From: Convolutriloba macropyga
Lineage: Eukaryota
Length of the DNA: 64,000 nucleotides
Assembly: GCF_964194025.1 (NCBI RefSeq)
Contig: NC_134468.1
Coordinates: 6,262,001 to 6,326,000, forward strand
Reading direction: 5' to 3'
The notes under the pieces are model-generated. The model was not told the DNA's origin. It saw only the letters and a list, made by a program, of their open reading frames with translations, and did not search any database. Each line of letters opens with the position of its first letter. The first letter of the stretch is position 1. This document shows, in pieces, positions 898 through 50,698 of this stretch. The translations under genes and the position numbers were made by a program.

Positions 898-3892
898 AAC
901 ACAATTACGAAAATTAGGCCAGAAGTCTCCATAAAATTAATGTCCTGAGAAAACTGACAGAAGTTCACAGTCCAATAATAGTAATATTCACTAATCCGAA
1001 GAAGAAAAATGAAACGTTAAGTGGATGCCTCTATAAGAGACATCGGAAATGCTCACATTCTCGTTCTTAAAACGCTAAAAAGCGTACGTCTGCGATATAG
1101 AAGTGGAAATCATCATTACCAAGCCCAAAACATGGGGAAGAACGACCTGCAAAACCAGGCTTATGATTTTGACAAATTTGAAAAGCAGTAAAAAGCCAGA
1201 AAAACTTTGAACCCAAATAATGTAGAGCTTTTACACCTATTACAATCCAAGCCCTTTCATTGCAAAAAAAAGAAATTCAGAAATAACAAATAAAAAACAG
1301 TCAGGAGAGGGAAAAGAAATATAGTTGAAACAGATTTGAACATGAGTTGCAAAACTTATGGCTGAGAATAAAGATAAAAGTGTTCCACGCAAAAACCTCT
1401 GATTATTAATTATATCCATATTTTAGAATAAATATCAAACAATTGTTCTGTGTTTAGAGCCCTATTACTTGTCTTTCATTGGCAGAGCTCTATAAAATTG
1501 TCCTTTCGATTAACTTTCAATATCAATTGAGGTTTATATCACTAATGTAAATTTTAAAGTTGAGTGCAAGAATTCCTTACAATTCGAGTGAGGCCGCAAA
1601 AACAATTGATTGCGAAGAACAACAACGTAGTCGCAAGAAATCTGACAGAATGAACGCTTAACTTCACAAAGTCCACAGCGTGTAGTTCGACAATGATTCA
1701 CTCCGTCAAATTTATATCTAAAAGAGAAGGACAAACAGACTTTCCGCTGCAAATTATCTACAAAAACCAAACGAAAAGATAAAATTAAGAAACCGAACGG
1801 TTAATAAGTCTCATTCATTCACTCATTGATGCGAGTTTTCTGTTTTCGAACAATCGTGTTTTCTGTTTAAGAATTAAATAAGAATAACAGTTGCTACAAA
1901 AAATAACTATAGAAACAGAGCCCTATTACAAAACTTTCAAGAAACAGTACAAATGCGGTTACGTATAGCGTAATCAATGTCATATACATGTTAAATAAAC
2001 AAAAAAGATCTTGAAAGAAAATAAACGTGAAAAAAACTAATGGCAAGCAATTAAAACCAGTTGGAATTTAGTAATTTTGAGGACTACAAACACCACTAAA
2101 AAAGGCGTTTGAAACTACAGAATGTCGATCAGAAGATTAACAATTGTCAACCAATTATTTTCTAAAAACCTATAAAAGCAAACGAACAAAATTTGGCCGC
2201 CGTTTTGTCTTGGTCCATCGGAGAAAGGACAACAGTTAGCAAAGTAGCAATCCCTTTCACTCTCCGATTTTCGCTTTGTTCAACAAAATGCGCAAAAGAT
2301 TTAGTTCATATGCTTCGACTCAAAACAAGATGCGATCAGTAGTTGCCTCAGCTTTAACTTCGCAGCAATTAATCACTGTTCTGGTTCCGTTCAAATGTTC
2401 TCCATGAGCTCATCATTCAAAACTTAATCTAGAAGACTAATGCAACCCTGTGTCATAGAATCTAAGTTCTGAACTTGGAACCAGTATCAATTTAAAAGAA
2501 AAATTAAATTCAGTTCTGAAAGATGGTATCCCAATAGACCTTTTGAACATGCCCAACTGTATTTTCAGTAAAAAAAAAGTGCACATACTTCTCCGATAGG
2601 AATTCTGAGAAGCGTGAATGTATATGTCTTTCACGTGTAAGCGCACATAATCGTATGCAAGAAACCCAATAACTAGTTTATTCAAATTCCCGCTAGCTTT
2701 TAAACAACCTCAAAACCCATTCAAGTTAAAGGTTAGGATTTAATTGATTAATTGATTTAAAACTTATAGGCACTTAACTTCTAATCACTAATAGGTCGTG
2801 TTTGCACCCAACGTGGATGACGCTAGAATGTAAGGTTCAGACTACTGTCACCCCAAAAGCAATGTTTAGTTACTTCTCTGCTCCAGTTTACTCCGAAGCC
2901 AACGTCAACATATTACCTTCATAGTATCATGATAAAAAACTTGTTGCATCAGTTTCCATTGAATTTTTAAATTTTGCTTAATGAAGGTAAAACCTATTTT
3001 ATGGCGTTATGTTTTAATAATGGAGAAGCGCTGATTGCAGATTCAAAAAACAATTAGCGCCCGAGAATTTCAACCGCAACAATTTCTAATATTTTTGGTC
3101 AAATGTGCATTTTCACCTCTCAGTACACTTGCGCTACATCTTCCTGAATATGAATCATTGAGCCATGGAAAAATTTAGATTGGCCTAATTGTTGTGATAA
3201 ACTTATTAAATAGAGATGAGCCAGCGAGGCATGGGAGATCTGATGAAAAAATTGCATGAGAGTGAGGGTCTTGATGAACCATCCAAGGAAATTTTGAAAA
3301 CCCTAATTGAAGAAAATATTGGAAAAAATGCACGAATTGCCGAATTGGAATCTGAGGTGGCACAGATGAAGATCAAAGTTAATCAACTCGAAGATATCAA
3401 TCAAAAGATTGCCTAATTTTTCGCAATCTACCGTTTAGTTCAAATGGAACCAACCTCTCAGATGTGATTGATCTTATTCAAAATGTGTTGAATGTCAACA
3501 TTGAACCGCGCGATTTAAAAGCGTGCCATCCGTTGGGCAGAGGATCGCCATTCAATCCACCACCAGTTATTGCGAAGTTCGTCTATTTCGACCAAAAGGA
3601 AAGAATCTGGACCAGGAACGGTTTGCTACGGAATTATAGGAATCCAAATAATGGAAAACCGGTTTTTTGATTATCGAGCGATTGAGCAAGTACGAAAAGT
3701 CATTGAAAGAGGAGGGTCAAGCAAAACAGTTAAAGGTTACTACTAAGAATTTGGCACCACTTGTTCAGATCGAGTCAGACGGGATGAAGCGATATCTTGA
3801 ACTGAACTCCATTCAAGATATTATTGAATTGCAACCAGTCGCTAGTAAAATTGAAAGGTTCAATTATCCAAAGAATCTACCACAAAAGCAAA

Positions 3893-6800
3893 GCCAAGTA
3901 TACACGACAACAGCGGGTTCGATGGAAGTCAATGAAATTATCTATAACACGCCTGTTCCAAAGCTAACAAACAGCCAACTTTTGCGCCTGGTACACCTTT
4001 ATCGACCAAAATGCCTTTCCTAAAGCGTATGTGTGACAATTTTGAGAACAGCGACTATCCCAATCTAATGGAGGAACTAAAAAGCAGGAGAGCTGATAAA
4101 GACGAATTGCTTGATTTTGTTATGGGTCTCTTAAGTGGTTCGCCGAATGCCAATGAGACTATTCTTGCTAATATTGAGGAACAGCCGTTTCGGAGCGAAG
4201 AGTGCTGAGAAGAGTCTGGAACATAAGAGTTCACCCCTTAGATTTAATAAAGCGACCAAAATTAGATCTGCATCAAATCACTTCATAATTTTACACTTAA
4301 ATACTAGATCCATTAAAAAACATGATGAAGAATTAGAGGCACTGATATCTTAATTTTGAGTCTCCGCCTTTTGTCATATGTTTAACAGAATCTTGTCTAA
4401 CAGTTAATGATGATCCGAATTTATTCAAGGTAGCAAATTACAATAATTGCTTGACAAAATCAAGAAGTGGTAGGGGTGGAGGTATTATGATCCAAATAAG
4501 TGATGAGGTGAACTTGATTGAGGAGCTGAATTGCAAATTAAATGAAAGTCTTTTGGTTCACTTGAAATTCGGAGAGTTAAAGATTGCTCTGTTAGTGGTT
4601 TGTAATCACCCCAAAATTAACAAGCAGAATATCATTTTTGAGCTCGATAAAACAGTGGAAAACATCAATGAAAATTATGACAGAATAATTGTTTGTGGGG
4701 ACTTAAACATCAACGTGCTAGATGAAAATCTGATGACGTCATCATATCTATCGACTATCCAACCAAATGGTTTTCAACTATGTTGTCGTGAGCCAGCTCG
4801 CATCAGCCGAAATACCTCGACTTGTTTGGATCACTTTTTCGTAAAGAATTTAAGGATTCAGAAAACTTTTGTAATGGAGGATAACAATTATTGCGATCAC
4901 TTTCCAATTGTGTTGGAATTTGAGAAGATTAGCAAAAGTTGTTAACCAGAAATTGGTTTTCGTGACACCAGTTTTTTTTAAAATCGTTGAGTAGATTGTC
5001 TTCTTTTCTTGATAACCTTTCTAAATCACTAGCGACAATAAGATACCAGGAAACGGAAAGTATAAACTGTGCTTTTGACAGATTTGAAAATACTTTTAAA
5101 GAAGTATTAGCAATGTTTGCACCATATCGGAAGTCAAGCAGGAATACAATTAAAAAACCTAACTGGTTTGATAAAAATATGAAAAATTTGATTTGCAAAG
5201 AAACCAATAACACAAGTCATGGAAAATGGACCGTCAGAGCAACCAAAAATTAGAGAAGTTTAAAGCACTACGAACTAAAGTGGAGAAAACAATCAAAGCC
5301 AAAAAGAATTCTTACTATGAGCAAAAGTTCTCAAAATGCATCGGAGACTCAAAACAAGTTTATAAATTTTTAAATGAGCTTAAGGGAGTTACTATTAAAA
5401 ATTCTAAAGTTCCTTACCAAATAAAAGATGGTAGAAGAGTTGATGATAATCTAGATGTTGCAAACGAGCTCAACACTTTTTTTGTAGGTATAGGACAGAA
5501 ACTAAAAGCAGACATCCCAAATGATATTTTTGTTAATCCTAAGGCTAATATTTTGCAGAGTATGTGGCTTTATGAATCAAATTGCAACGAAATCTTGCAA
5601 ATAATTGAGGATCTCAAAGAAAAATCATCTTCGGGAGTTGATGAGAGTAGTACGATTTTGATTAAGAAAACGGGTTTCTTAATTTGCAAGCATCTTGTTC
5701 ATCTCGTAAATAAATCTTTTAAAGACGGTAAATTTCCAAGTATTCTGAAACAAGCTACAACTGTCCCTCTGCACAAGGCAGGGGCGAAAGACGAGATAAA
5801 TAACTACCGACCAATTTCGCTTCTCATTGTGTGGAGTAAAGTTTTTGAACGCGTTATGTATAATCGAATTTATACTTACTTTGAAACTTTCGGTTTGTTC
5901 CATCCTAATCAATTTGGTTTTCGAAAAAAACAGCACTATTAATGCCATCGCAAATTAACAGAGACAGTTCGTGAGAGCCGCCATTGTCAGGTAGCCACAT
6001 TTTTTATTGACTTAAGAAAGGCTTTTGACACGATAGACCACCAAATCCTATTACAAAAGCTCGAACTATATGGTAAAAGAGGATTTTGCCTAAGATGGAT
6101 TAGTGATTATTTATTGGAAAGACAGCAATGTGTTTCAGTCAATAATTGCAACTCCAGCTGGCTGAAGTTAACTTGTGGTGTTCCACAAGGCTCGATTCTT
6201 GGCCCACTCCTTTTTTAAATATACATAAATGACCTTCCACACGTGTGCCAAGTCTTCAGAACTTTTCTATTCGCCGATGATACCAACTTAACAGCAGTCA
6301 ATAGAAAATTTTGAATAAATGCAGAAAGATTTGGTCAAAGAGAAATGGCTCAACGCCAAGTATACACGACAACAGCGGGTTCGATGGAAGTCAATGAAAT
6401 TATCTATAACACGCCTGTTCCAAAGCTAACAAACCGCCAACTTTTGCGCCTGGTACAACTTTATCGACCAAAATGCCTTTCCTGAAGCGTATGCGTGACA
6501 ATTTTGAGAACAGCGACTATACCAATCTAATGGAGGAACTAAAAAGCAGGAGAGCTGATAAAGACGAATTGCTTGATTTTGTTATGGGTCTCTTAAGTGG
6601 TTCGCCGAATGCCAATGAGACTATTCTTGCTAATATTGAGGAACAGCCGTTTCGGAGCGAAGAGTGCTGTGAAGAGTCTGGAACATAAGAGTTCACGCCT
6701 TAGATTTAATAAAGCGACCAAAATTAGATCTGCATCAAATCACTTCATAATTTTACACTTAAATACTAGATCCATTAAAAAACATGATCAAGAATTAGAG

Positions 6801-8819
6801 GCACTGATATCTTAATTTGAGTCTCCGCCTTTTGTCATATGTTTAACAGAATCTTGTCTAACAGTTAATGATGATCCGAATTTATTCAAGGTAGCAAATT
6901 ACAATAATTGCTTGACAAAATCAAGAAGTGGTAGGGGTGGAGGTATTATGATCCAAATAAGTGATAAGGTGAACTTGATTGAGGAGCTGAATTGCAAATT
7001 AAATGAAAGTCTTTTGGTTCACTTGAAATTCGGAGAGTTAAAGATTGCTCTGTTAGTGGTTTGTAATCACCCCAGAATTAACAAGCAGAACATCATTTTT
7101 GAGCTCGATAAAACAGTGGAAAACATCAATGAAAATTATGACAGAATAATTGTTTGTGGGGACTTCAACATCAACGTGCTAGATGAAAATCTGATGACGT
7201 CATCATATCTATCGACTATCCAACCAAATGGTTTTCAACTATGTTGTCGTGAGCCAGCTCGCATCAGCCGAAATACCTCGACTTGTTTGGATCACTTTTT
7301 CGTAAAGAATTTAAGGATTCAGAAAACTTTTGTAATGGAGGATAACAATTATTGCGATCACTTTCCAATTGTGTTGGAATTTGAGAAGATTAGCAAAAGT
7401 TGTTAACCAGAAATTGGTTTTCGTGACACCAGTTTTTTTAAAATCGTTGAGTAGATTGTCTTCTTTTCTTGATAACCTTTCTAAATCACTAGCGACAATA
7501 AGATACCAGGAAACGGAAAGTATAAACTGTGCTTTTGACAGATTTGAAAATACTTTTAAAGAAGTATTAGCAATGTTTGCACCATATCGGAAGTCAAGCA
7601 GGAATACAATTAAAAAACCTAACTGGTTTGATAAAAATATGAAAAATTTGATTTGCAAAGAAACCAATAACACAAGTCATGGAAAATGGACCGTCAGAAC
7701 AACCAAAAATTAGAGAAATTTAAAGCACTACGAACTAAAGTGGAGAAAACAATCATAGCCAAAAAGAATTCTTTCTATGAGCAAAAGTTCTCAAAATGCA
7801 TCGGAGACTCGAAACAAGTTTATAAATTTTTAAATGAGCTTAAGGGAGTTACTATTAAAAATTCTAAAGTTCCTTACCAAATAAAAGATGGTAGAAGAGT
7901 TGATGATAATCTAGATGTTGCAAACGAGCTCAACACTTTTTTGTAGGTATAGGACAGAAACTAAAAGCAGACATCCCAAATGATATTTTTGTTAATCCTG
8001 ATGCTAATATTTTGCAGAGTATGTGGCTTTATGAATCAAATTGCAACGAAATCTTGCAAATAATTGAGGATCTCAAAGAAAAATCATCTTCGGGAGTTGA
8101 TGAGAGTAGTACGATTTTGATTAAGAAAACGGGTTTCTTAATTTGCAAGCATCTTGTTCATCTCGTAAATAAATCTTTTAAAGACGGTAAATTTCCAAGT
8201 ATTCTGAAACAAGCTACAACTGTCCCTCTGCACAAGGCAGGGGCGAAAGACGAGATAAATAACTACCGACCAATTTCGCTTCTCATTGTGTGGAGTAAAG
8301 TTTTTGAACGCGTTATGTATAATCAAATTTATACTTACTTTGAAACTTTCGGTTTGTTCCATCCTAATCAATTTGGTTTTCGAAAAAAACAGCACTATTA
8401 ATGCCATCGCAAAAATAACAGAGACAGTTCGTGAGAGCCGCCATTGTCAGGTAGCCACATTCTTTATTGACTTAAGAAAGGCTTTTGACACGATAGACCA
8501 CCAAATCCTATTACAAAAGCTCGAACTATATGGTAAAAGAGGATTTTGCCTAAGATGGATTAGTGATTATTTATTGGAAAGACAGCAATGTGTTTCAGTC
8601 AATAATTGCAACTCCAGCTGGCTGAAGTTAACTTGTGGTGTTCCACAAGGCTCGATTCTTGGCCCACTCCTTTTTTTAATATACATAAATGACCTTCCAC
8701 ACGTGTGCCAAGTCTTCAGAACTTTTCTATTCGCAGATGATACCAACTTAACAGCAGTCAATAGAAAATTTTGAATAAATGCAAAAAAATTTGGTCAAAG
8801 AGAAATGGCTCAACGCCAA
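3893..8819 (+). repeat. Tandem duplication of ~2.46 kb (3893-6354 and 6355-8814) within the LINE
   Basis: Near-identical sequence at an offset of ~2460. GCCAA microhomology at 3893, 6355 and 8815. Confidence 0.95.
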
Positions 8820-9992
8820 CAAGCTGTCTCTTAATCATGAAAACAGTTGTCAAATGAATATTAAAATAGAAAACAGTGCCTCTAATGTCAATAGCTTTTC
8901 CGTATTTAAATTAAATTCTGTTAATATACCTGAGTCAGAAAGCTGCAAGTATCTGGGTGCGTTTGGATAAAAAATTGAAATTCACAGAGCACATTGAGGA
9001 TGTGAAGAAAAAGTTAGCAATGCAGTGCGGAATAGTGTCAAAATTATGGCATTATGTACCAAAACGTCTTTTACTCCAGTTTTATTCATCAAATATCAAA
9101 CCAATCATTCAATATGGTGTGCTGATATATGGATTTGTAAGCTTTACTTCCCTTCAACCTTTAGTTCTATTGCAAAAAAAAATACTCAGGCTCATTTTGT
9201 TCCAGAAATACACACAAAATGTAACACAGTTTTTTGACAAATACAAGGTCTTAACTGCTCACGAATTGCATATTTACTTCTTAAATTTGTAATAAAATCA
9301 GTAAATAAAATGCACACAGATACATATCTTAATGAGTTGATTTCTTTCGCATCCCGATCAAACAATTCCACGAGAAGATCGTTGAAATGGTTTTTGAAAG
9401 TACCAAAGTGTAAACGAAAGTCTGAAATGAATTCATTGAGATACAGAGTTGCCAAATTACTTAATCTTTTTTATTGAAAACAATGTGTTACCATTAAACT
9501 ATAATGAGCTTTCTAGTTTTTCGCTTGTCAATCTGGTGCACAAAATAAGAGACAATTACATTTTATCGAATTATGAATTAACAAAAACAATCTTCTCCTA
9601 GTTGCGACTTTGTGTACACCTTTCGATGAATTTTTTTTTAAGTTATTAAAAAGACAACACAAAATGATCCAATTTGCTGTCGCCGGGGTCTTCTAAAGGG
9701 GTAAAAAAATTGTCAAAAATTGAAAATTCCATCAAATAAATTGAGAATTTCATCTATTATCTTTCAATAGTGAAAGTTTTTTTTCTTTTTGAATAGTCAT
9801 ATCCAATCGTAAAAAAAAAGAATAAAGGGCAGTGCTCAGTGATCCAGTCGGATCCGTAAACTGTCCTCTCTGAGTGTACAATGATTTTATGTATAATGCA
9901 ATGATAACTTTAGGCTTTCTGATCTTGAACTCTATAAGTAGGTAATTTTGTCATGTGTTATATTTTGATGTTTATTTATACTCAGAGGAATT

Positions 9993-10050: not shown

Positions 10051-10868
10051 TGCGAAATCAAAGTTTAATTGAGGCTTAAAGAAGTAAAATTCATTTTTAG
10101 GGATAATTTAGTTGGATACAACATGGTCACATATCTTACGCAAATAGTTTCCAAAAATAGCCCCCTGTTTTCAGAGATTAGGTTTTTTCTCTAGTTTGTT
10201 ATGGTGCATCCGCTTTTTAAACGATCTGATAAATTTTGGCAGCTTCTATAAGAGGGCCGAAATTTGCTATTTTATCAACAATGTCTTATTCGGTTCCGAA
10301 TACCTCTAAAATTTAGTTACGACTTCAATCACATAGATCTAATGAGTTACGGTTGTCACATTAACCACCATCAGAACTTCTTTGGAAAATTGATCCAATT
10401 GATTGAATTGATAATTGTTACAATGGCTTATGGTAAACTGATCAGTTTTGAGGGTTACAGTTTCACATTTAAGCGTAAAATTGACAGTTCGTGATATCTT
10501 CTGACGCTGTTAAGGGACTGCTTGCTTGATTTTCCTTAAACGTGTCTGGTCAGCATTGGATAGAGATCAAACATAGTGCACAAATTGAAAACAATCATTT
10601 GGACATCAATGTTGATGAGAACAGTGATAAAAAACAAGTGAACATAATTTATCAGTAGAGAGGAACGAAACTCATTTTCAGATATTTGCGTTTGGCCAAT
10701 TCATAGATTCTACGAAAATAATAGAAAAACAAAGCAAACTGCTACTTAGAAAAAACTGTCTTACATTCTTACAAGAAAAAATCAATCAATAATTGAATAA
10801 CGTATTAAATTTTTTTTTAAAAAAATAATAAAATTCTCACAAAACTTGTCAATTGAGTGCTGATGCAG

Positions 10869-11074
10869 GCTCATCAGGAGAATGCTACGACTACGTTGAG
10901 CTCTATGACGGTTCATTAATCAACTGGACACTGATTAAGATTGGTGGTAGAAGCAAAGCATGCGGCTTCTCGAACCCAACAAGGAGTAACTATGTCTCTA
11001 ATGGGAGCTGGGTTTTAGTACGATTCGTATCAGATCAGCTCAACAACTTTCGAGGATTTAAAATATCTTTTCAG
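10869..11074 (+). CDS. DEG/ENaC gene A exon: C-terminal half of CUB domain
   Basis: GSSGECYDYVELYDG...ACG...VSNGSWVLVRFVSDQLNNFRGFKISFQ is a typical CUB C-terminal half. Acceptor TGCAG, phase 1. Same 206-nt length as the paralogous exon 43955-44160. Inferred GC donor at 11075. Confidence 0.85.
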
Positions 11075-11659
11075 GCTGGCATCGGTTTCCTATCCTTCTT
11101 AAACTTTATGATTATTTCTGCAAGCCAATTAACGAAAAAGCCATTTCTGTACAATTTAAAGTTTTTCCTTTTGGCTCTTGTTTTCATAAACTTTTCTATG
11201 CGAGGAAAAGTTACTTTTTTAATGAAAAAAATATGGTCAGCTCGACCATTTGATCGAGCTGGCCATTGAAGATAGAATAGTTAAGTATTCCGACGTTCTC
11301 AGTTAGAATTTGATATGAGTTCCAGTTATTTCGAAAATTACATACCAGGTAAAAAAAATCTTTTTGACGCAAACGATACCCTTCCCAAACTAAAATTTTG
11401 CAACATTTAAATACAAAACCAATTTAAGCAAAAAATACTTTAATTGACTATCTAACACTAAAATACTAAAATGTCCCGATTTGTATTAACTCTTATATTA
11501 ATTTATAAAAGCACGAAAAAACTGAAAGTGCTCTGATAACACCACTAACTTGATTCAAAAGTAAAACGTTGACTTTGATCACACGTTTCTTCAATTCACA
11601 ATGTTAATTTCACTTGAACAGATGATAGTATGATCATGTTGATAACCTCTCACAAAACA

Positions 11660-12000
11660 AGTTCATTATTGTACCCACCCACCTTAGTGGAGGAGGAACT
11701 CTATGCTCAACTGGGTTTTTTGTTCAGTCATATTTGGCCGGTCGATATACTCATCGTAGAGAGTGGTATCATTACAAAGCCCGTCCAGCGTAGATTATAG
11801 AACTAAAAAGATTTTTTTTGAATTAGGTTTTTCTAAGGAGTTATCGAGTTTTATGAGCATTTGACTGATTTCAGTTCACATTTTCCGTATTTTTGCTCAA
11901 TTCATTGTCAATTTTGTTTAAAAATATGTTAAAAACTATCTATGGGTGCGAAAAATTGAGCTCAAAGAGGGGTTCGAATTAATTTCTGAATAAGAGCAAT
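11660..12000. repeat. Interspersed repeat (family Y)
   Basis: Similar to 14360-14560 (GGAGGAACT...CTCATCGTAGA...GTCCAGCGTAGA...GGAGTTATCGAG) and to 13885-14040. Confidence 0.7.
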
Positions 12001-12218
12001 TTAGGTCACGCAAAAATCAAGAATTCAAGGGTGAAAGAGTCGCTTGAAAAGTGAAATGTTCTACAAAAAAAAACGGTCAACAAACTTACATTAAAAGACA
12101 ATGACTGTTTCGAACTTCGTTTGAGAGCAATTAATCAGGAACTTTTAGCTTGAGAGAAATCTTTCTAATTGTTGGAAAAACCAAAGGGCATAAAGTAGAA
12201 TAGGAAACCGTTCCTAAG

Positions 12219-13210
12219 GCAATCGCGAAAAATCGCCGCCAGAAGCGAGAAATTACCACTGCCAACCAGAAGAGACCGCAGATTGTGAAGCATGAAAAAA
12301 ATCGACTTCTGAAACAAAGACCCCGCAGCTCAGCAGCAGTTTCCAAAAGAATTAAAAGAGGATCTTTGAAGGGTTTTTACTTTAAAAGAACAAATACAAA
12401 AAACAATTACAAAACTAAACGGGATTTGGACGCCATATATAGTGATACTTATGGGTACGATAATTATAACTATTATGATCACGGCGGTTATGAATACCAA
12501 CCTAACTATAACTACCAACCTAACTATGATTACCAACCTAACTATGATTACCAACCTAACTATGATTACCAACCTAACTATGATTACCAACCTAACTATG
12601 ATTACCAGCCTAGAGATTATTATCCAGCCAAAGACTATTACCAAAATTCTTACGACTACGATACTTACCATCATGATTATTCCGCATACTACGATTACCT
12701 AACTTATGAAGATTATGAAATAAAGCGAGAAGAATTCAACCCATTTGACCAATTTTTTAACATATCGGAGGACGACTACTTCAGTATGTACGACAGATCA
12801 AACCTTCTAGATTATTCCGACTTCAGACTTGCAGCTTTCTTCACCCAGGGTGAAATGAAGTATAACGGCTATCAGAAAGATGATTTCATAGCACAATGTA
12901 CTTTTGACGGCAAAAAATGCGGAGCAACTTGGTTTAAAACGTACCAAGACCCGTATTACGGAAACTGTTTCACTTTCAACTCAATCCGAGATAGAAATTT
13001 GTCACACCCAGTTTTCATTCGGTCAAGTGGCAAAACAGGGCAAGAGTATGGGCTAAAACTCACTCTGTTCTTTGATGTGGAAGAGTATATTGGTCTTCTG
13101 GGGCAGAATGCTGGCGGGAGGGTTCTGGTTTTTGACCCAGAAACACATGGCAACATCAGATCGCAAAGCTCGGCAGTTGGAGCTGGTACCAACACCTTTA
13201 TCTCCGTCAG
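12219..13210 (+). CDS. DEG/ENaC gene A exon: convertase-site linker, Tyr/Asp-rich repeat, and extracellular core (palm/beta-ball region)
   Basis: RRQKR, RIKR and KTKR sites; YDYQPN repeats; FIAQCTFDGKKC...DPYYGNCFTFN...GQEYGLKLTL are DEG/ENaC signatures. GT donor at 13211. Confidence 0.9.
12489..12614 (+). repeat. Coding 18-nt minisatellite, 7 units of Y[D/E/N]YQP[N/R]
   Basis: TATGATTACCAACCTAAC repeated in frame. Confidence 0.95.
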
Positions 13211-42199: not shown

Positions 42200-43459
42200 G
42201 CACGTTTAGTGCATTATCTCTCTTGCTTGGTATCAAAACCAAATTGAACAGAAGAACAATATTAATAAGATTTCTTCACCTAATGAAGAAATAGTTCGTA
42301 GTAATGGTCAATAATAAAAAGAAAATTTGTGAATGATTCCTTCCGTGCGCATAATTTCCCCACCGCATAAAGAGTTATCATCTCACGCTGCTCTGTAAGC
42401 TATTGCAGAAACGTTTGCCTTCATACAAAAATCGTCATCAAAGCATCATACAAATGCCACAATTCAAAGCAAAAAGACGGAAAGGGGAAAACATGAGTTT
42501 TCAGATCAATGTTACAAAATGAAGAACCTTCCGGAGTAATTGCAACTCACTCCGAGAAAGATGAAAACATGCACGAAAATATTTTCAACTCACAGTACAT
42601 ATGCTTAGTCGTTAAAATAACTTTAATTGGTCCATATTCAAGAAAAATGACGAAAGTACTTATTTTTTTAAAATATATAATGGATTAATACAAATCTTTG
42701 TTATCAAACTTTGATTCGGAATCAAAAGTTTTTGCTCATTAAAAGTTCAAATAAGGAAGTGTTTGTTTTGTTGAAGAATTCTTCATTCTTCTCAATCGCT
42801 CTCTATAACATCAGTCTTGTTCTTCTTAAATTTCAGAATTCTTCTCTTTTCAATCTTCATTGAACTCTTGAAAATCCAGATAGAAGTACTTATGGAGAAA
42901 ATTCAGATAGAAGTTGGCCAATTTCCTAAAAGAGCAAGAAATTAAGATCCACGTGAAATCAGTACAACTTGATTATAACTAAATATTTTGTTCAAGTTTT
43001 TGCGAAATTTAAAAGATTTATGATCAAGGTAAACAGATTTCACTAACTGCTTTCAAGGAAAACAGGCAAACTTCTGTCTGGATTTTGTCCGTAAGTACTT
43101 TTGTCATTTTTTAAGAACGTAGACAAATTAAAATTATATTGATTTTCATTCGACTCACGTAAAACTCAAGGAAAACGTAAATCGGAATGTTACTGAAAAA
43201 CTTCTTCTAAAACGGGTACTTTACTAGGTAATTTTTTCATTTGATCGCTTAATTTTGCTAACAAAACTAGTTGGCTAAATTCTTTCAAATTGCACAAAAA
43301 GTACGTTCTTAAGAATATTTAATCCCAAAAAACTCTGATTTGATATGAAAATACACTTGAGTCAAGCCAAGTCATAATTGAGCAAAAGATTCGCAAACTT
43401 ACGAAAAGATCAGCCTGGTAACGAAAGGCAATAAAAACAGTTGATTTGATTTCTTTCAG

Positions 43460-43598: not shown

Positions 43599-43954
43599 GA
43601 ATGCAGCAATTGGCATACATTTAAAAACAAAACTTAAATTAAGGAGGCCACAATTGATAATTTTGTTTAAGCGAAGAATAGAAATTGCTGTCTCACAAAT
43701 TACTACAGTCCTGATCACAATGTTGATCAATGTATAAACAAAAAACAAATAGAACAGCTATTCTTCATTTTTAAGAACTCAAGGGGCAAAAATGGTTAAT
43801 GCGTTCTTAACTAATCATAATTTTTATGGGTTGAAAAGAGGTGGTATTATCAATTGCAAATCAAGGCACAAAAATTAAAAATTACAAACCAAGGCACAAA
43901 GGAACAATCTAATTCGACATTGTTCCTTAATTACTTTTTCAATTGCTTGCCAAG

Positions 43955-44160
43955 GCGAGCCTGGTGACTGCAATGATTACGTTGAACTTTACGATGGAGA
44001 ATTTGTCAACGCAACGGTTATCAAAATTGACGGACGCAAACGAATATGTGGATTTTCGAACCCATCAACTACAAATTACATTTCTACTGGTAGTGTTATG
44101 CTCATTCGGTTCGTATCGGATGAATTGAACAACTTTGAGGGATTCCAATTGGGATATCAG
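43955..44160 (+). CDS. DEG/ENaC gene B exon 7: C-terminal half of CUB domain
   Basis: GEPGDCNDYVELYDG...RICG...STGSVMLIRFVSDELNNFEGFQLGYQ, collinear with gene A exon 10869-11074. Inferred GC donor. Confidence 0.87.
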
Positions 44161-45126
44161 GCTAGGATCGGTTTCCTTTCATTAAATGTTTCACCCAATA
44201 TTCCAATACTCACTCCATTTTAAACCCAATATTCAAAATCTTAACAATATTCTCCGTTCTTGACCTATAAAAAAATGTCTCATAGCACAGCAAAGTATTC
44301 AAAAAATGAATATTTGTTAAGACACGGGAGCGTGAAGGCTGCTACTAACGAGTACCCTCCAAAATGGGGGCACAAATGGTAAGAACCTAACAATCTTCTA
44401 GCAAAATCCACTCGCCCTTTAATTATTTACGTCTTTTTAGCTCTTGAACAACTAATACTTTTAGCCCATAGGAATAAAATACGACGGGAGACTTAGCATT
44501 TCTTTCGCACGCACGTGACATTGTCTCAATAAAGAGTTAAAGTACAGTCTGATTGTAGCTGAAATCATGCAGGCTCACATGTACTGAAAAAATCAGTCGC
44601 GTTAAATTTTGAAACTAAACATTGACATATTTGGAAAGCGTTAAACTCTGCTCAAACAAATTCCTTCACGGCATATACATGCCACTGATCAACAGTCTGG
44701 CTCATTATGCAATGATGATCATCAACGAAACAGAACCCAAAAAATAAAAGAACGATATCTGAAAACAATGCAAACGCCAAACTATTGACAAACTATTGAC
44801 TCGAGAAATAATTGTCGGTCAAATATTTGAACTGATGAAATTGCATATAATCAGTACTGCTCTGAACAAAAACTGTTATCGTATCTGCTTTAACATTCAA
44901 CTCATACAGCTTAAGAAATCAAGATAAACTCTACTTTCCAATAACTTGCATTAAATTGCCGCTAAAAAATTAGAGAGCAGTGAAATTTAATATGGAGCAC
45001 ATTTGATTTCATATACGTCAGCAGCAATTGATGTCCATGTCGTATTCTAATTCGAAAAACGCCGTTCGCGGGCTGCTGGTATAATTCGATTTGCTGCAAA
45101 AAGTAAAAGCAGCAAACCGAAGAAAA

Positions 45127-45254
45127 TGGGGACAAAACGTTGATGAGTTTTCGATTCCCGGGAACTTAGTACGATGGACTCTGATAGATTAGTCTATCAG
45201 AGTCCATCGTACTAAGTTCCCGGGAATCGAAAACTCATCAACGTTTTGTCCCCA
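45127..45254. repeat. Perfect palindrome (62-bp arms, TTAG loop)
   Basis: TGGGGACAAAACG...CTGATAGA-ttag-TCTATCAG...CGTTTTGTCCCCA. Confidence 0.95.
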
Positions 45255-45475
45255 GTTTAGGTCGATAACAATTCTGCCGTTAAAGAAGTATCCATTGAAA
45301 CATAAAAAGTTAATTCAAGCTGCGCCAGCGGGCGCTTAGACGGGTAAACTATGTCAATTTTTCTTTCGCCTCATTAATGACGAATTTAACCGCCTTTTGT
45401 AAATGCATTTTTTAAAATTAGTTGTGCTAAATTGCTTTATGACTTTACGGTACAAAGCAAAGTGACACCAGCTTT

Positions 45476-48400
45476 AGAGAGAGAGAGAGAGAGTCAATTT
45501 ATCCTCGCCCAGTTAATACGACGAAAATTATATAAACACATTTTAAACATCAATCAACCATTATTTGAGACAACGGAATTAATCATCAAACGAAATTATC
45601 AACAATTTAACATCTTTAACATCAATTGCCTGAAAAATAGGCCAGGGAAGGACAAGCAACGAGGAGGTCGTTAGACCTGCTTTCCGGCGCGCCCTACATT
45701 TTTCAAACTGATAAAATTATTAGACAAAAACTCAAAAGACAGCAAAAATGTGAAAACATACTTTTGCCATCAAAAAATTCTTAGGAAAAAAACTTATCAC
45801 AATAAAGCATAGAATCCAACATTAGCATCCTCCTGCTGCCACGAACACTTAGCACTGTACTTATTCTATTGCCCCATTTGACCGTAAAAGTTCATGTTGC
45901 TACTTGTTCTATAGTGTCAGTTTCGGAAAGAATAAATGTCAAAAACTATATTTAGACATGAAAAATTTGAACTTTTGAGTGCAAAAAAGAGCCCGCGGTG
46001 CCTTCCAGGAAGGCACCGGCCAAATTTTGGCGTAGAATTCAGCAAAATATTAAGTGATTTAGTATGAGCTTTGGTTCACCTGTAATCCTTGCAAAAGATT
46101 TTTCGAACAAGCTCATCGTTCGCAAGTATGAAAGAATCTCTTAATAGATGGTAAAAACCGGAAACTTGCCACATGCTTGCCTTAATCTCCCCTTCTGGGA
46201 GAAGACTTTGCATTTTCAGCAGATTAAACAGAAGAGAAGAAGAGAGGTACGGTGACAAATGGAGTTTCTCTCCATTTTGATTTCGAGTTTGGGATTTTAA
46301 GTAACCTTAAGAGATGCACGTCTAGTGGACACACCTGATCTTTCCAATTGAAACATATCGTTCAAATACTTTTCTGTATGAAGCCCGTTTAATGATTCAA
46401 TCTATTGAATCATTAAATGCATTTTAAGTATTTCAATTAAAGTATTTTTTCTGTAGCTGATACACAACTAAAGAACAAAAGGTGCAGCATCCGTAAACCA
46501 GTACGCCGTACTGCATAACTGGATTCATTACGCTTTTATAGTTTTCAAGTAACTGGTACGCGTGGAACAAAGTGCCTTAGCTTCGAGATTACACCGCATT
46601 GCCCGCTCAGTCTTGTAAAAACTAATTTTATGTGCGAACGGTAGGAAAACTTTGAATCAACTGTTATACCAAGATATTTCCATTCATTTTTCATAACAAC
46701 ATAATGATATTCAATTTTAAACTGATGACTGGAAGCACTTGTTTTATTATTCAATTGAAAGGTTTTTGAGATGTTAAGCTTTACTTTATTTGCATTTAGC
46801 CACTTCGTTATCTTTAGAAGGTCGGCTTGAATTTCTTCACTCGAACAGTTCAATCCACATATATTAGTGTCGTCGGCAAAGAGATAAATATCATTTTGAG
46901 AGCAAACATTTGGCAGATCATTAATGTAAATCAAAAATAAGAGTGGCCCAAGGATGGATCCCTGAGGAACGCCACAGTTTACATTTAACCAATTTGATGA
47001 CACACCCATTTTTGTATTTTTTTGTGATCTTTCAGATAAATCGCTTTTAAACCATTTTAAGGCAGTATGACGAATACCATGTAGTTGCATTTTGTAGAGT
47101 AAAATTTGGTGATCAAATGTGTCAAAAGCCTTCTTCAGTTCAAGAAGAAAGTTTACGGTTTCTACTTTAATTCTCCTTATTTTTTCAGTTAATTCTGCCA
47201 ATGCATCAATTGTTGAATGGGTTTTCCGGAATCCCAATTGCTTAGAATATAGTAGATTAAAATTCTCCGTGTACTCACATATTCTGGCGAACATTGCTCC
47301 CTCATATTTTGCTCCAAACCATTAGAAGATATTGGTCTATAACTATTTTCACCCAACCGAGAACCATCTTTGAATAGAGGAATTACCTTAGCTTTTCTGA
47401 GTTCTTTTGAGAAGCAACCTTCATTGAAGGATTGATTTATTAGTGAAGCTAGATAGCAAGTGATCACAGATCCTGCAGTTTTCACAATTATGTTATTAAT
47501 TTCATCTTCACGCGATGATGTTTTCTCCGGAAGAGATTCTATGATTCCTTTTATTTCATATTCGGATACCGAACTCAATCTAAATGACATTTCAATGTCT
47601 CTAGGATAAATTATTGGTTCAGCGGGAATACTTTGCTGTATGTTTTTGCCAACATTAAAAAAAACTCATTCAATTTTTCCGCAACTTCAAAAGCGGATGG
47701 ATTGGAATCAGAACTCAAAAAACAGAATTTCAATTTAGGAATCATAGTATTGATAAGAGTCTTTCCATTGAGCTCATTTAGAAGATTGAATGTTTGTCTT
47801 GAGTCTCCGATACAATTTTTGAACTGCTTCTTATAATACGCTTTTTGCTTGCTTCATGCTCTTTTCGAGTCGTAACCGAATGTCTTTAAATTTCTTTAGC
47901 AAAGTCAAATTTGATTTATATTTTTCCATTTCTTGTGCGTCAAATTACGTTGAGTACGTAGATTTACGAGATTGTTATCATACCATTTTGGTAGAAAACT
48001 TTTTCTAGGATGAATTTGCTTTAAAGGTGCATATCGATCAGTAATCGAAACAAAAACCTTATGAAACTCGTCGAAAGCCCTGCTTCTACAGCAGTAAGTT
48101 GTTTTGAGCGGATTAGTTAATTCGTGATTCAAAACGATATTGTATTCCTCAACCTTATCGCGGTGATGGAGAAAAGAAGTATCTCTTATAAACTTACTAT
48201 TGGTTTCAGTTTTTCCTTGAATATTCCATTTGAACAACACAAGATAGTGATCAGAAAAACTTTGATGCTCAAGAATAATGCAATCAGAGAGCAAGTTTTG
48301 ATAAATTAAATGGTCAATGCACGACACTGAACGATCGGTGACTCGAGTTGGTTCGTTCGGTAGAAGCCGGAAACAATTGGAGTTGATTGTATTTACTTAA

Positions 48401-49800
48401 TTTTATGTGAGTAAATTATCCTTTAAGGTATCAATATTGAAATCCCCACAAATAACTGGAGAAAAATTCGAAATGAAATTGCTCAGCATTTCATCCAAAA
48501 GTTCTACAAACTCCAAATTGTTTGCCCTTGGTTTATTGTAAATTACTACTAAACGAAAAAGATAACCTGTCTCACTTTTAACAGCCAATGACTTCTAGCA
48601 TGTTTTCGTAGGCAGTTTGGAACGCGCATTAATCATTAATTTGTATCATTACACATCCTCCTTTTGAATCACGATTCTTCGATATTATACTTTTATAGCC
48701 CTTTACAGGAAAAGAATGTGGATTATCATTTTCCATCAGCCACGCTTCGGTTAAACAAAGGATGTCTGGCGAAGACTCAAGACTACTTACAAGTGCTTCC
48801 AGATGTTCGAAGTGTTTTTTTAGTGAGCGAATATTTAGGCTTAGAACATAAAGCAAAGAACAACAAGCTATTGCTTTAGGTGAATTCAGTACACGGTGAG
48901 GAGGGGGAAAATATTACTCCGAGAATGATTGAAGCATTTACTGAATTCATGGAAGTCATAATTCAGATTCAGCTCATACAGCTCGATTATCTTGTACACT
49001 CTCTCATTTTCTCTCCAAACATAGAAAATTGTGCCTTCTCGCGTCCAAACGGACTCAATTCTTTGATCCTTTTTGATCTTAGAGAAGAATTCGGCACGTG
49101 CTGGTGATATGTCTTCAAAAACCCTGACGTTCGATGACAAGTTTTCTTGTTCCGCAACATTTCTGTCTTCATGACTCTTCGTGCAAAACGCACAATAATA
49201 GGACGCTCTCCTGTTTTGCCACCAGGAAGTCTATGAGCAGTGGAAATATCTCTCGTAGAGAGTGACACCCATACATGACGCAACATCGATGACCTTCTCT
49301 ATCGTTTCAGAATCTTTCTCTCCCACAAGAATCCCTTCATCGTTCTGTCTGGCACTTTCTTTTACACCAAGTAGTCTGATATTATCCCTTCTATTATAAT
49401 TCTCCACAGTTTCAGCTGGAGCCATTGCTACAAGCCTGCATAGTTCTTCTTGGTGAAAAAGATAGTCTTCAATTTTCTGCATGATTTCTGCCTTTAGGTC
49501 TTCTTTGATTGCCTCGATGGCCTCTTGAAAAGCGTTTGGCAGCTTGAATTTCATTTTTTATTATAGGGATAAGATCGTTTCGCATATGCCCAATGCACGT
49601 TGGGATGCTAATACTGATGCGATCTTGTCTATTTTTGACAGGAAAACATCTAAGCTATCTGTACTAGGGCTGGAATCAGGTTTAGCCCTCTTTGCATCAT
49701 GCTTTGAATTGATAGGTATTTGGCCAAGAAACCGCAAGTTGGGTAGCTCAGTGTCTTCGCTTTCATTTGACATCTCTGAAACTATTTAATAAGTTTATCA
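45476..49800 (-). mobile_element. Decayed full-length LINE (ORF1 + APE-RT; CR1/L2-like) in a gene B intron
   Basis: ORF1 (NYNRRDNIRLLGV; ISTAHRLPG...PIIVRF), APE (SLNIRSL, LCLTEAWL, ICGDFNID, SCIDH) and RT (KKAFDT, GVPQGSILGPLLFLIYINDL, FADDT). The (TC)n tail reads as (GA)n at 45476-45493. Frameshifted; 5' end approximate. Confidence 0.93.
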
Positions 49801-49994
49801 CAACAATTGGGCTAAAATTAGAGGGCTCTTGGCTTGCCCTTTTTTGAGTATATCGTTGACTTAATTTTAAGATATATTAAATCATCATAACCATTAAACT
49901 ATAAGAATTTTGGTATCTAAGTAGGTACTGAAATCAACTTTGTGGAAAATGCACAAATGATTTCAAGTAACTTGATGAGGAAACCGTTCATTAG

Positions 49995-50698
49995 GCTATA
50001 ACGAGCTTCTCTCGGCAAAAACGAGACATCGCTATATCTAAATCTGACCTATCAGAGATACATACAAGCGAAGCTTCGCAGAAAGTGAAACGAGGAACTT
50101 TAAGCAAATTCCACTTTCGGACAAGAAGGACAACAGGTGGAGATTCAAACTCGTTTCCTGACTACGATAGAGATTACGATTCTTATCAGACTTATGAAGA
50201 TTATCAGAGAGAAAATTCTAACTTCAATCAATTTGATCAATTCTTCAACATATCCGATAACGACTATTTCACTTTGTATGAAAAATCGGACCTACCAGAT
50301 TATTCTGATTTCAGATTGGCGGCTATTTTTACCCAAAATGAAATGAAGTATAACGGATACCAGAAAGACGACTTCATTGTTCAGTGTACTTTTGACGGCA
50401 AAAAATGCGGTTCGAGTTGGTTCAAGACTTACCAAGACCCATTTTACGGCAACTGTTTCAGTTTCAACTCAATTCGAGATCGCAACTTGTCACAGCCCAT
50501 TTTCATTCGCTCCAGCGGCAAAACTGGACAGGAATATGGACTTAAATTGACGCTGTTTTTTGACGTTGAGGAGTACATTGGTATTTTGGGACAAAATGCT
50601 GGAGGAAGGGTTCTGGCTTACGACCCGGAAATAGTCGGCAACATCAGAGCCCAAAGCTCTGCAGTGGGAGCTGGTATGAACACATTCATCTCTGTCAG
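49995..50698 (+). CDS. DEG/ENaC gene B exon 8: convertase-site linker and extracellular core
   Basis: AITSFSRQKR...KVKRGTLSKFHFRTRR...FIVQCTFDGKKC...DPFYGNCFSFN...GLKLTL...FISVR; GTAAG donor. Confidence 0.9.

What the first reader, a model, noticed from the sequence alone, without database searches (positions are those of the whole stretch)
11075..12218. GC-AG intron whose two ends base-pair, with the pairing kept between paralogs by different sequence
Seen: the CUB exon must join the next exon in phase 0. In gene B an in-frame TAG sits directly before A-I, and A-I / R-Q-K-R differ between paralogs only at synonymous positions, so they are coding. The fitting donors are CAG|GCTGGC (A) and CAG|GCTAGG (B); the acceptors (..GTTCCTAAG, ..GTTCATTAG) have no polypyrimidine tract. 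The intron ends are complementary. Gene A: CGGTTTCCTAT (11083-93) pairs with ATAGGAAACCG (12200-10), and ACTTTATG (11103-10) with CATAAAGT (12189-96). Gene B (intron 44161-49994, 5.8 kb including a whole LINE): CGGTTTCCT (44169-77) pairs with AGGAAACCG (49978-86), and CATTAA with TTGATG. The core is conserved although the rest of the introns is unalignable, and the stem extensions differ yet still pair. AGGC is repeated at both junctions. Inference: an RNA stem brings weak, non-canonical splice sites together across a TE-expanded intron. Alternatively this is an old introner-like element (TIR + TSD) whose pairing has been retained.
Basis: partly seen in the sequence, partly recalled or inferred. 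Interest (0 to 1): 0.85.

Follow-up and report, generated by a model that had tools for sequence, protein, structure and literature searches.

The report
Hairpin-ended GC-AG intron in an acoel
In a channel gene of the acoel worm Convolutriloba macropyga, an intron that starts with GC instead of GT has two ends that base-pair, and this pairing has been kept in three old gene copies, so the hairpin probably helps the cell cut the intron out.

Summary
The window is Convolutriloba macropyga chromosome 1. It carries tandem DEG/ENaC channel genes with an LDLa-LDLa-CUB insert.

- **Junction:** Fifteen intronless homologs read straight across the site, so there is no hidden micro-exon.
- **Pairing:** the intron ends pair strongly (-26, -21 and -17.5 kcal/mol).
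- **Conservation:** only the first ~17 and last ~17 nt are conserved. Synonymous sites are saturated (dS 1.5-2.5).
- **Same pattern elsewhere:** the neighbouring GA/GC-AG intron shows it too. So does a GG-AG intron in an unrelated LANCL1-like gene. None of 23 GT-AG introns does.
- **Earlier notes:** the scan had already flagged such introns elsewhere in this genome.

Best reading: a spliceosomal intron whose conserved terminal helix bridges poor splice sites. It was probably born from a hairpin-ended insertion into a formerly intronless gene.

- The conserved core has the same sequence in all copies, with one CpG-type compensatory pair.
- The "different" stem extensions are not significant.
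- The donor fits a variant U1 found in this genome.
- No repeat family shares the termini.

No RNA run could be laid, so splicing and the role of the stem remain untested.

The parts
10845..10854 (+). 3' arm (CTTGTCAATT) of the preceding non-canonical intron 6 of gene A. That intron is GC-AG, 11.25 kb, and ends at 10868. Its 5' partner AATTGACAAG lies just upstream of the window.
   Evidence: dG -17.6 kcal/mol; 10-bp perfect helix at +13..+22 / -24..-15.
10869..11074 (+). Gene A exon encoding the second half of the CUB domain; ends ...GFKISFQ.
   Evidence: tblastn of the RefSeq protein P0151; ORF reading; CUB Pfam hits on homologs.
11075..12218 (+). Intron 7 of gene A: GC-AG, phase 0, 1144 nt.
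   Evidence: same junction in the RefSeq models of paralogs B and C; continuous peptide in intronless homologs.
11075..11080 (+). Donor CAG|GCTGGC.
   Evidence: It pairs at -3..+1, +3 and +5 with the U1 variant ATACTAACCTG.
11083..11093 (+). 5' arm of the core helix, CGGTTTCCTAT (intron +9..+19).
   Evidence: Pairing probability is 0.9 or more in the fold of the whole intron.
11103..11110 (+). 5' arm of the gene-A-specific extension, ACTTTATG.
   Evidence: Not significant on its own.
11662..11935 (+). Dispersed repeat of about 270 bp inside the intron. It has many copies in the genome and is unrelated to the intron ends.
   Evidence: 40 hits at 74-81% identity to intron positions 588-861; depth spikes.
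12189..12196 (+). 3' arm of the extension, CATAAAGT.
12200..12210 (+). 3' arm of the core helix, ATAGGAAACCG (intron -19..-9).
12211..12218 (+). Acceptor region TTCCTAAG, poor in pyrimidines.
   Evidence: Y = 0.40 over -22..-3.
12219..13210 (+). Gene A next exon. It begins AIAKNRRQKRE, runs through a basic and Tyr-rich linker, then the ENaC extracellular domain.
43599..43954 (+). Gene B intron 6: GA-AG, 356 nt. Its arms are AGCAATTGG at 43605-43613 and TCAATTGCT at 43939-43947, with two further G-C pairs outside them.
   Evidence: Junction ...LSTEG|EPGDC in RefSeq P0160; (dG -14.0).
43955..44160 (+). Gene B exon for the second half of the CUB domain.
44161..49994 (+). Gene B intron 7: GC-AG, 5834 nt.
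   Evidence: RefSeq P0160 reads ...GFQLGYQ|AITSFSRQKRD.
44169..44177 (+). Gene B 5' arm, CGGTTTCCT.
   Evidence: dG -21.4.
46545..48327 (-). Degraded reverse-transcriptase (LINE-like) element inside gene B's intron 7.
   Evidence: RVT_1, E = 3.9e-26; the ORF is broken into pieces.
49978..49986 (+). Gene B 3' arm, AGGAAACCG.
49995..50698 (+). Gene B next exon, beginning AITSFSRQKRD.

Best explanation
**What it is**
This is intron 7 of a DEG/ENaC channel gene that carries an LDLa-LDLa-CUB insert, in the acoel Convolutriloba macropyga. It is a phase-0 GC-AG intron.

**Structure**
Its first ~19 and last ~19 nucleotides form an RNA helix. The core is GGUUUCC / GGAAACC, at +10..+16 against -16..-10. 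The helix loops out the repeat-filled interior (1.1 to 5.8 kb). This places the 5' and 3' splice sites about 8 nt from the foot of the helix.

**How it most likely works**
The major spliceosome removes the intron. G+1 and the terminal AG are kept. The donor also matches U1, especially a U1 variant of this genome, everywhere except +2. The helix probably acts as a bridge. It would compensate for the +2 mismatch and the pyrimidine-poor acceptor by pairing the right two sites across a long intron.

**Wider class and origin**
The intron belongs to a class of G[A/C/G]-AG introns with paired ends in this genome. It most likely arose when a hairpin-ended (TIR-like) element inserted at CAG^GCN in a previously intronless gene, before the gene triplicated.

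**Shown:** the junction, the helix, its conservation, and its restriction to non-canonical introns.
**Inferred:** that the helix forms in vivo, that splicing needs it, that the spliceosome does the cutting, and the transposon origin.
For: **Junction**
- RefSeq models XP_075238780.1 (gene C) and LOC142334552 X2 (gene B) map onto the genome only with CAG|GC...AG|GC at this site.
- Fifteen homologs encoded as uninterrupted ORFs read GF.ISF[KQIS]-A... with no extra residues.

**Helix**
- Duplex energies are -26.1, -21.4 and -17.5 kcal/mol against a null of -9.1 +/- 3.7.
- In whole-intron partition-function folds the terminal helix has P >= 0.9.

**Constraint**
- dS between paralogs is 1.5-2.5, and four-fold sites are 42-53% identical.
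- Only intron positions 1-17/23 and the last 12-17 nt stay colinear, at 82-88% identity.
- Gene C shows C-G to T-A at +9/-9 and gains T-A at +8/-8.
- Under simulated neutral decay, 5-14% of lineages keep dG <= -17.5.

**Specificity**
- Across the three genes, all six non-canonical introns (positions 6 and 7) score -14 to -26. All 19 GT-AG introns score -3 to -12.
- In an unrelated LANCL1-like gene the single GG-AG intron has a 14-bp perfect helix across its 5' splice site (-20, or -26.8 with exon flank). Its four GT-AG introns score -8 to -10.

**Origin**
- The intron-bearing clade A/B/C is nested among intronless lineages.

**Assembly**
- DNA contigs of four runs cover both junctions, with no variant in the arms.
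Against: - No RNA reads could be laid. Splicing rests on RefSeq models, whose evidence I could not inspect, and on protein continuity.
- The only clean compensatory change involves two CpG transitions, which are the commonest mutations. It is weak proof of selection for pairing rather than for sequence.
- The stem extensions are not significant.
- In genes B and C the outer pairs (+2..+5 with -4..-1) would bury the acceptor AG and must open before catalysis.
- The terminal helix of gene B's intron 6 is not favoured in a whole-intron fold.
- One GC-AG intron (gene B, intron 5) has no stem, so a stem is not needed for every non-GT donor.
- No repeat family shares the termini. The 'target-site duplication' is only one letter beyond what any intron shows.
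Confidence: 0.6

Rival explanations
1. The paired ends are only the decayed terminal inverted repeats of an old DNA transposon that became an intron. They have no present role in splicing.
For: The ends look like TIRs, and AGGC flanks both. The intron position is specific to the A/B/C clade. Similar TIR/TSD introns are described in Fritillaria, Amoebophrya and euglenids (PMC11282704).
Against: Paralogs are saturated at silent sites (dS 1.5-2.5) and the intron interiors are unalignable. Yet both arms stay 82-88% identical and still pair in all three copies. Neutral decay would rarely leave that. Two further intron positions show the same thing with other sequences.
Confidence: 0.15
2. The intron is removed by a helix-guided, non-spliceosomal or modified pathway like the nonconventional introns of euglenids. 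In that case the G...AG ends are incidental.
For: The features match the euglenid description (PMC4770533; PMC11282704): a helix bringing the intron ends together, non-canonical donors, a poor pyrimidine tract, and short direct repeats at the junctions.
Against: All seven instances keep G at +1 and AG at the end. Only +2 varies, which is the pattern of tolerated spliceosomal variants. The donors retain good U1 complementarity. The pairing register (+9..+16 / -9..-16, or across the 5' splice site in LANCL) is not the euglenid +4..+6 / -8..-6.
Confidence: 0.08
3. The conserved blocks are sequence-specific signals, such as binding sites for a splicing factor or for a variant U1, and their complementarity is a by-product.
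For: The core sequence itself is conserved, not just its pairing. The 5' block overlaps the donor region, and this genome has several U1 5'-end variants.
Against: The 3' block is the reverse complement of the 5' block. Intron 6 and the LANCL intron have quite different sequences that are again self-complementary. A shared protein site would not predict that.
Confidence: 0.07
4. The junction is mis-modelled. The real donor is the GT at ATCG|GTTTCC, or there is a hidden micro-exon, or the conserved 5' block is coding read-through (Q-A-x-I-G-F-L).
For: The read-through frame gives I-G-F-L in all three copies, with a synonymous ATC/ATT difference. GTTTCC could fit a U1 variant ending in AAAACCUG.
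Against: No AG acceptor exists in the phase that the GT donor needs (read). The read-through frames stop after 8, 20 and 64 codons with no similarity beyond IGFL. The conserved 3' block contains stops. Intronless homologs align without a gap across the junction. The RefSeq models use the GC donor.
Confidence: 0.03

Closest known systems
(AC)m-(GT)n structure-bridged introns of teleost fish (Lin et al. 2016, Genome Res 26:12, PMC4691745)
   Same: Complementary sequences at opposite ends of a spliceosomal intron form a bridge that enforces correct pairing of the 5' and 3' splice sites. In those introns the bridge replaces the need for U2AF2. Here too the acceptor is pyrimidine-poor and the predicted helix spans a long intron.
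   Different: The fish arms are simple dinucleotide repeats, and the introns are GT-AG. Here the arms are unique sequences conserved between paralogs, and the donors are GC, GA or GG. U2AF2 independence is untested here.
Intermediate and nonconventional introns of euglenids (PMC4770533; PMC11282704)
   Same: A stable helix brings the intron ends together. Donors are non-canonical. The pyrimidine tract is weak or absent. TSD-like repeats sit at the junctions. A MITE-like origin has been proposed. A GC-AG example is described.
   Different: The euglenid core pairs are +4..+6 with -8..-6 (CAG/CTG). Their borders vary freely, and excision yields circles by an unknown mechanism. Here G+1 and AG are invariant, the helix sits at +9..+16 / -9..-16, and the host is a bilaterian animal.
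Transposon-derived non-canonical introns of Fritillaria borealis and of Amoebophrya and other dinoflagellates; introners (Henriet 2019, as summarised in PMC11282704; PMC9860276; PMC12130899)
   Same: TIR-like ends plus short direct repeats at the junctions. The intron positions are lineage-specific in genes that lack them elsewhere. Spliceosome tolerance of non-GT donors accompanies the gains.
   Different: Those introns belong to multi-copy families with recognisable sequence similarity, and in Fritillaria they use AG-AC or AG-AT borders. Here no family shares the termini. The intron is old (it predates a triplication with dS > 1.5), and its helix has been conserved.
Ordinary GC-AG U2-type introns; GA-AG donors common in Eurytemora and Oikopleura (Frey & Pucker 2020, PMC7072748)
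   Same: Only +2 departs from GT, the acceptor is AG, and the remaining donor positions pair well with U1.
   Different: Ordinary GC-AG introns have no end-to-end helix and have normal pyrimidine tracts. One such intron exists in gene B (intron 5) and has no stem.

Membership tests
U2-type GC-AG spliceosomal intron | Borders G-C ... A-G that restore the reading frame. | tested here: met
   Exact mapping of the RefSeq proteins allows only GC-AG among AG-ended solutions. Gene B's model gives the same junction. Intronless homologs are colinear.
U2-type GC-AG spliceosomal intron | Near-consensus donor at the other positions (pairing to the U1 5' end). | tested here: inconclusive
   CAG|GCTAGC pairs at 6 of 9 positions with canonical U1, and at 7 of 9 with the variant ATACTAACCTG present in the genome. 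Whether that variant is expressed is unknown.
U2-type GC-AG spliceosomal intron | Polypyrimidine tract before the acceptor. | tested here: not met
   Pyrimidine fraction over -22..-3 is 0.40-0.45, against a mean of 0.60 in 23 GT-AG introns.
U2-type GC-AG spliceosomal intron | Lariat formation and removal by the major spliceosome. | not testable with these tools
   No RNA run was available.
Introner / MITE-derived intron | Many similar copies of the element in the same genome. | tested here: not met
   BLAST of the whole intron finds only an interior ~270-bp repeat. A 20-nt terminus pattern with up to 2 mismatches finds the three paralogs and no element with a matching 3' arm.
Introner / MITE-derived intron | Terminal inverted repeats. 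| tested here: met
Introner / MITE-derived intron | Target-site duplication flanking the element. | tested here: inconclusive
   AGGC is found at both junctions (AGGCTA in gene B). But AGG is expected at any intron, and the C belongs to a conserved Ala codon GCN, also present in intronless homologs.
Introner / MITE-derived intron | Lineage-specific intron position. | tested here: met
   The position is uninterrupted in all 15 homologs seen, including two paralogs in the same genome. A/B/C is nested among them.
Euglenid nonconventional / intermediate intron | Helix that brings the intron ends together. | tested here: met
   (predicted only).
Euglenid nonconventional / intermediate intron | Conserved pairs +4,+5,+6 with -8,-7,-6, and variable borders. 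| tested here: not met
   The core is at +9..+16 / -9..-16. G+1 and AG are invariant in all seven instances.
Structure-bridged (AC)m-(GT)n introns | Complementary simple repeats at opposite intron ends. | tested here: not met
   The arms are unique sequence.
Structure-bridged (AC)m-(GT)n introns | Splicing depends on the bridge and not on U2AF2. | not testable with these tools
   Needs minigenes or knock-down.
U12-type intron | Donor /RTATCCTT, and branch site TCCTTAAC 10-26 nt before the acceptor. | tested here: not met
   The donors are GCTGGC, GCTAGG and GCTAGC. TTCCTAAG in gene A abuts the acceptor and is not conserved in B or C.

The most novel reading that the evidence does not exclude
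Convolutriloba macropyga, and perhaps acoels at large, has a distinct and numerous class of structure-dependent G[A/C/G]-AG introns. On this reading they were created by hairpin-ended elements inserting into formerly intronless genes. Their recognition would rely on the terminal helix rather than on full U1 and U2AF contacts. They would have evolved together with a diversified set of U1 5' ends. This would be the first such system in a bilaterian outside the tunicates, and it is old enough to show long-term selection on the helix.
Probability: 0.3. Interest if true: 0.85.

Novelty: new variant of a known kind. Interest (0 to 1): 0.6.

Why it matters
How new introns arise, and how the spliceosome copes with them, is an open question. 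Known cases of hairpin-ended non-canonical introns are young multi-copy elements in tunicates and protists. Their stems could therefore be mere relics.

This case is different in three ways:
- The stem has survived a gene triplication with saturated silent sites, so it is under selection.
- It occurs only in the introns that lack GT.
- The gene family is otherwise intronless, so the introns look gained.

That makes an animal system in which 'RNA structure substitutes for splice-site strength' can be tested directly, with three natural paralog variants as a start. It also matters for annotation. Gene finders that insist on GT-AG will break such genes in acoel genomes.

Tried and rejected
- **RNA evidence.** Two searches for RNA runs listed none. 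The four runs that hold the stretch are genomic contigs. I used them only to confirm the assembly and look for variants.
- **Transposon family.**
  - The whole intron matches only an interior dispersed repeat.
  - A degenerate 20-mer of the 5' terminus gave 38 hits against 5 for the control. These resolve into the three paralogs plus unrelated repeats with no matching 3' arm.
  - One apparent relative (AGGCTAnnATTGGTyTC) is a ~50-nt dispersed motif with unique flanks. It is not an element terminus, and I judged its 15/20 similarity to be chance.
- **Known RNA families.** Rfam finds nothing in 10800-12700 beyond a chance hit far below threshold.
- **U12-type intron:** rejected on the donor and branch-site motifs.
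- **Coding read-through of the 5' block:** rejected, because the frames stop early and the 3' block has stops.
- **Stem extensions as independent evidence:** not significant.
- **Pyrimidine tract as a class difference:** not significant (p = 0.13).
- **U1 change facing +2:** none in the 20 copies read.
- **Literature.** Searches for acoel non-canonical, hairpin or gained introns found no description. The library is incomplete.

Full report
**Where we are.** The window is Convolutriloba macropyga (Acoela) chromosome 1, positions 6262001-6326000, in a 1.176-Gb assembly.
- A protein cluster that matches the next gene upstream carries the name XP_075238780.1. It sits on a contig of 89,262,563 bases, which is the length of this contig.
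- Three tandem paralogs encode DEG/ENaC channels with an LDLa-LDLa-CUB module. Gene C lies upstream of the window, gene A straddles its start, and gene B lies inside it.

**The observation.**
- The inverted repeat 11083-11100 / 12193-12210 is the longest in the region.
- The third paralog has the same arrangement...TATCAG|GCTAGCATTGGTTTCC ... GAAACCAATCACTAG|GCATCC.

**Is the junction real?**
- No RNA run could be listed, so I used two indirect tests.
- First, RefSeq models exist for gene C (P0151) and gene B (P0160). Mapping them exactly onto the DNA leaves GC-AG as the only AG-ended solution at this site.
  - The peptides read ...ISYQ|ASSNAEGRKKRQ and ...LGYQ|AITSFSRQKRD.
  - The data note for the assembly says poly(A) RNA-seq of the species is public. 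The models may therefore rest on reads, but I could not inspect that.
- Second, the family has many members encoded as uninterrupted ORFs, in other assemblies and twice in this same genome.
  - All of them read straight through, for example GYRISFK-AMVKNSRTRRQ against gene A's GFKISFQ-AIAKNRRQKRE, with no inserted residues.
  - This excludes a hidden micro-exon and the GT donor at 11085, which in any case has no acceptor in the right phase.

**Is the pairing more than chance, and is it special?** I compared the first 40 nt of each intron with its last 40 nt by RNAduplex.

| Introns | dG (kcal/mol) |
|---|---|
| Intron 7, genes A / B / C | -26.1 / -21.4 / -17.5 |
| Intron 6, genes C / A / B (GA-AG in B and C, GC-AG in A) | -22.8 / -17.6 / -14.0 |
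| The 19 GT-AG introns of the three genes | -3 to -12 |
| Random window pairs | -9.1 +/- 3.7 |

- Intron 6 is the other flank of the same exon. It is non-canonical by the same RefSeq mapping.
- When the whole intron is folded, the terminal helix forms with probability >= 0.9 in A7, C7 and C6. It does not form in B6.
- One GC-AG intron (B5, per RefSeq) has a normal pyrimidine tract and no stem.

**Conservation.**
- Synonymous divergence between the paralogs is 1.5-2.5, and four-fold sites are 42-53% identical.
- BLAST between the three copies of intron 7 finds only positions 1-17/23 and the last 12-17 nt in colinear order. Everything else is noise. Both arms are therefore under constraint.
- The pairs are set out.
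  - The core, +10..+15 against -10..-15, is invariant.
  - +9/-9 is C-G in A and B, and T-A in C.
  - +8/-8 is T.T in A and B, and T-A in C.
  - +16/-16 is lost in C.
  - In B and C, +2..+5 also pair with the last four letters, including the AG.
- The double change at +9/-9 consists of two CpG transitions, so it is weak evidence by itself.
- Intron 6 shows more turnover.
  - ATTGACAT/ATGTCAAT in C becomes AATTGACAAG/CTTGTCAATT in A, a T-A to A-T swap plus a new G-C pair.
  - B has shifted to a continuous helix GCAGCAATTG/CAATTGCT(T)GC.

**An independent gene.**
- Four of its introns are GT-AG, at -8 to -10 kcal/mol.
- Intron 3 can only be GG-AG, and is 5309 nt long.
  - It has a 14-bp perfect helix, AAAAG|GGAATTGAT with ATCAATTCCCTTTT.
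  - The helix spans the 5' splice site and ends 7 nt before the acceptor (-20.0, or -26.8 with the exon flank).
- This gene was not chosen blindly. Its sequence is, however, unrelated to the channel introns.
- Several other first-stage notes, and one follow-up in this genome, describe the same pattern elsewhere. I did not test those.

**Origin.**
- No repeat family shares the termini.
- The direct repeat AGGC is one letter more than any intron shows, and that letter belongs to a conserved Ala codon.
- On the other hand, the tree of the family places A/B/C inside a clade whose other lineages are all uninterrupted across these positions. The two outgroup lineages are uninterrupted as well.
- Either the A/B/C stem lineage gained nine introns, or four or more lineages lost all of theirs.
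- If the target was CAG^GCN and four letters were duplicated, both the GC donor and the AG acceptor would come from the duplicated target. That would explain why the donor is GC. This is inference.

**The donor is not simply weak.**
- The genome has at least 25 U1 genes.
- Of the 20 I read, 8 have the canonical 5' end. Most of the others keep a body 88-99% identical to the canonical copy but carry a different single-stranded 5' end.
- One variant, ATACTAACCTG, would pair with CAG|GTTAGT. Intron 7's CAG|GCTAG fits it everywhere except +2 and +6.
- None of the copies changes the base that faces +2.
- T at +3 is frequent in the GT-AG donors seen here: 6 of 23.

**Mechanism proposed.**
- The helix loops out the interior and brings a +2-mismatched donor next to a pyrimidine-poor acceptor. 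The fish (AC)m-(GT)n introns work this way, and their bridge makes U2AF2 dispensable.
- The outer pairs must open for catalysis.
- The retained G+1 and AG point to the spliceosome rather than a euglenid-like route.

**Other checks.**
- DNA contigs from four runs cover both junctions at single-copy depth. Variants lie beside the arms but not within them. About 0.8 were expected in the arms, so this says little.
- Rfam finds no known RNA in the region.
- Gene B's intron contains a broken reverse-transcriptase element, not an intact LINE.

**Verdict.** This is a real GC-AG intron with a conserved terminal helix. It belongs to a class of paired-end G[A/C/G]-AG introns in this acoel. A bridging role in splicing is the best-supported reading (about 0.6). 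A transposon birth is plausible but unproven. I found no description of such introns in acoels in the held literature.

Noticed in passing
G000 C1:4045322-4045481, C15:12297861-12298022, C7:54712531-54712688, C7:49259914-49260077, C10:13481482-13481642 and others (L083-L102): U1 snRNA genes come in several 5'-end variants: ATACTAACCTG, TTGATTACCTG, ATTTATACCTG, (ATATTT)AAAACCTG and ATATTCAGAACCTG. Their bodies are 88-99% identical to the canonical copy. The change is confined to the part that reads the donor site. T at donor +3 is common in this genome's GT-AG introns (6 of 23).
   Followed up: partly
G000, at least 128 places, e.g. C4:41266612-41266634, C3:10453743-10453765 (L052-L081): A dispersed ~50-nt motif, TTAATAGCCGCGAAGCGATAGCG-AGGCTATTATTGGTCTCATCGTGGTTTTT, with unique flanks on both sides. 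It gave 128 hits against 3 for the reversed control. It holds a hairpin TAATAGCC/GGCTATTA and an ATTGG box. Its function is unknown. It could be a promoter element, a small RNA or a very short mobile element.
   Followed up: partly
L014 (C2:65776335-65779532), L021 (C2:8537047-8540244), L025, L026: The ENaC-LDLa-CUB family is otherwise encoded by uninterrupted ORFs of 850-950 codons, including two paralogs in this genome. The intron-bearing A/B/C clade is nested among them. This suggests nine introns gained on one branch, or else repeated retroposition.
   Followed up: partly
window 42200-43459 (gene B intron 5): The RefSeq model of gene B uses a GC donor (CTAGTG|GCACGT), although a GT lies 3 nt upstream. 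This GC-AG intron has a normal pyrimidine tract and no terminal helix.
   Followed up: partly
L082:1400-6400 (C10:7466400-7471400): The GG-AG intron of the LANCL1-like gene is filled with about 5 kb of a 24-nt minisatellite. It reads as VENVDCLK repeats in one frame.
   Followed up: no
window 3200-9600: Two tandem, nearly identical copies of a non-LTR retrotransposon (endonuclease plus reverse transcriptase) lie in gene A's 11-kb intron 6. Both have broken frames.
   Followed up: no
window 12480-12640: Gene A's linker exon has a run of YQPNYD hexapeptide repeats from an 18-nt tandem repeat. It is absent in genes B and C.
   Followed up: no
G000 C11:42856988-42880642: Three same-strand near-matches to the intron-7 donor motif (CAGGCT.GAATC.GTTTCC) lie within 24 kb. 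They are not next to a CUB exon, and their nature was not examined.
   Followed up: no
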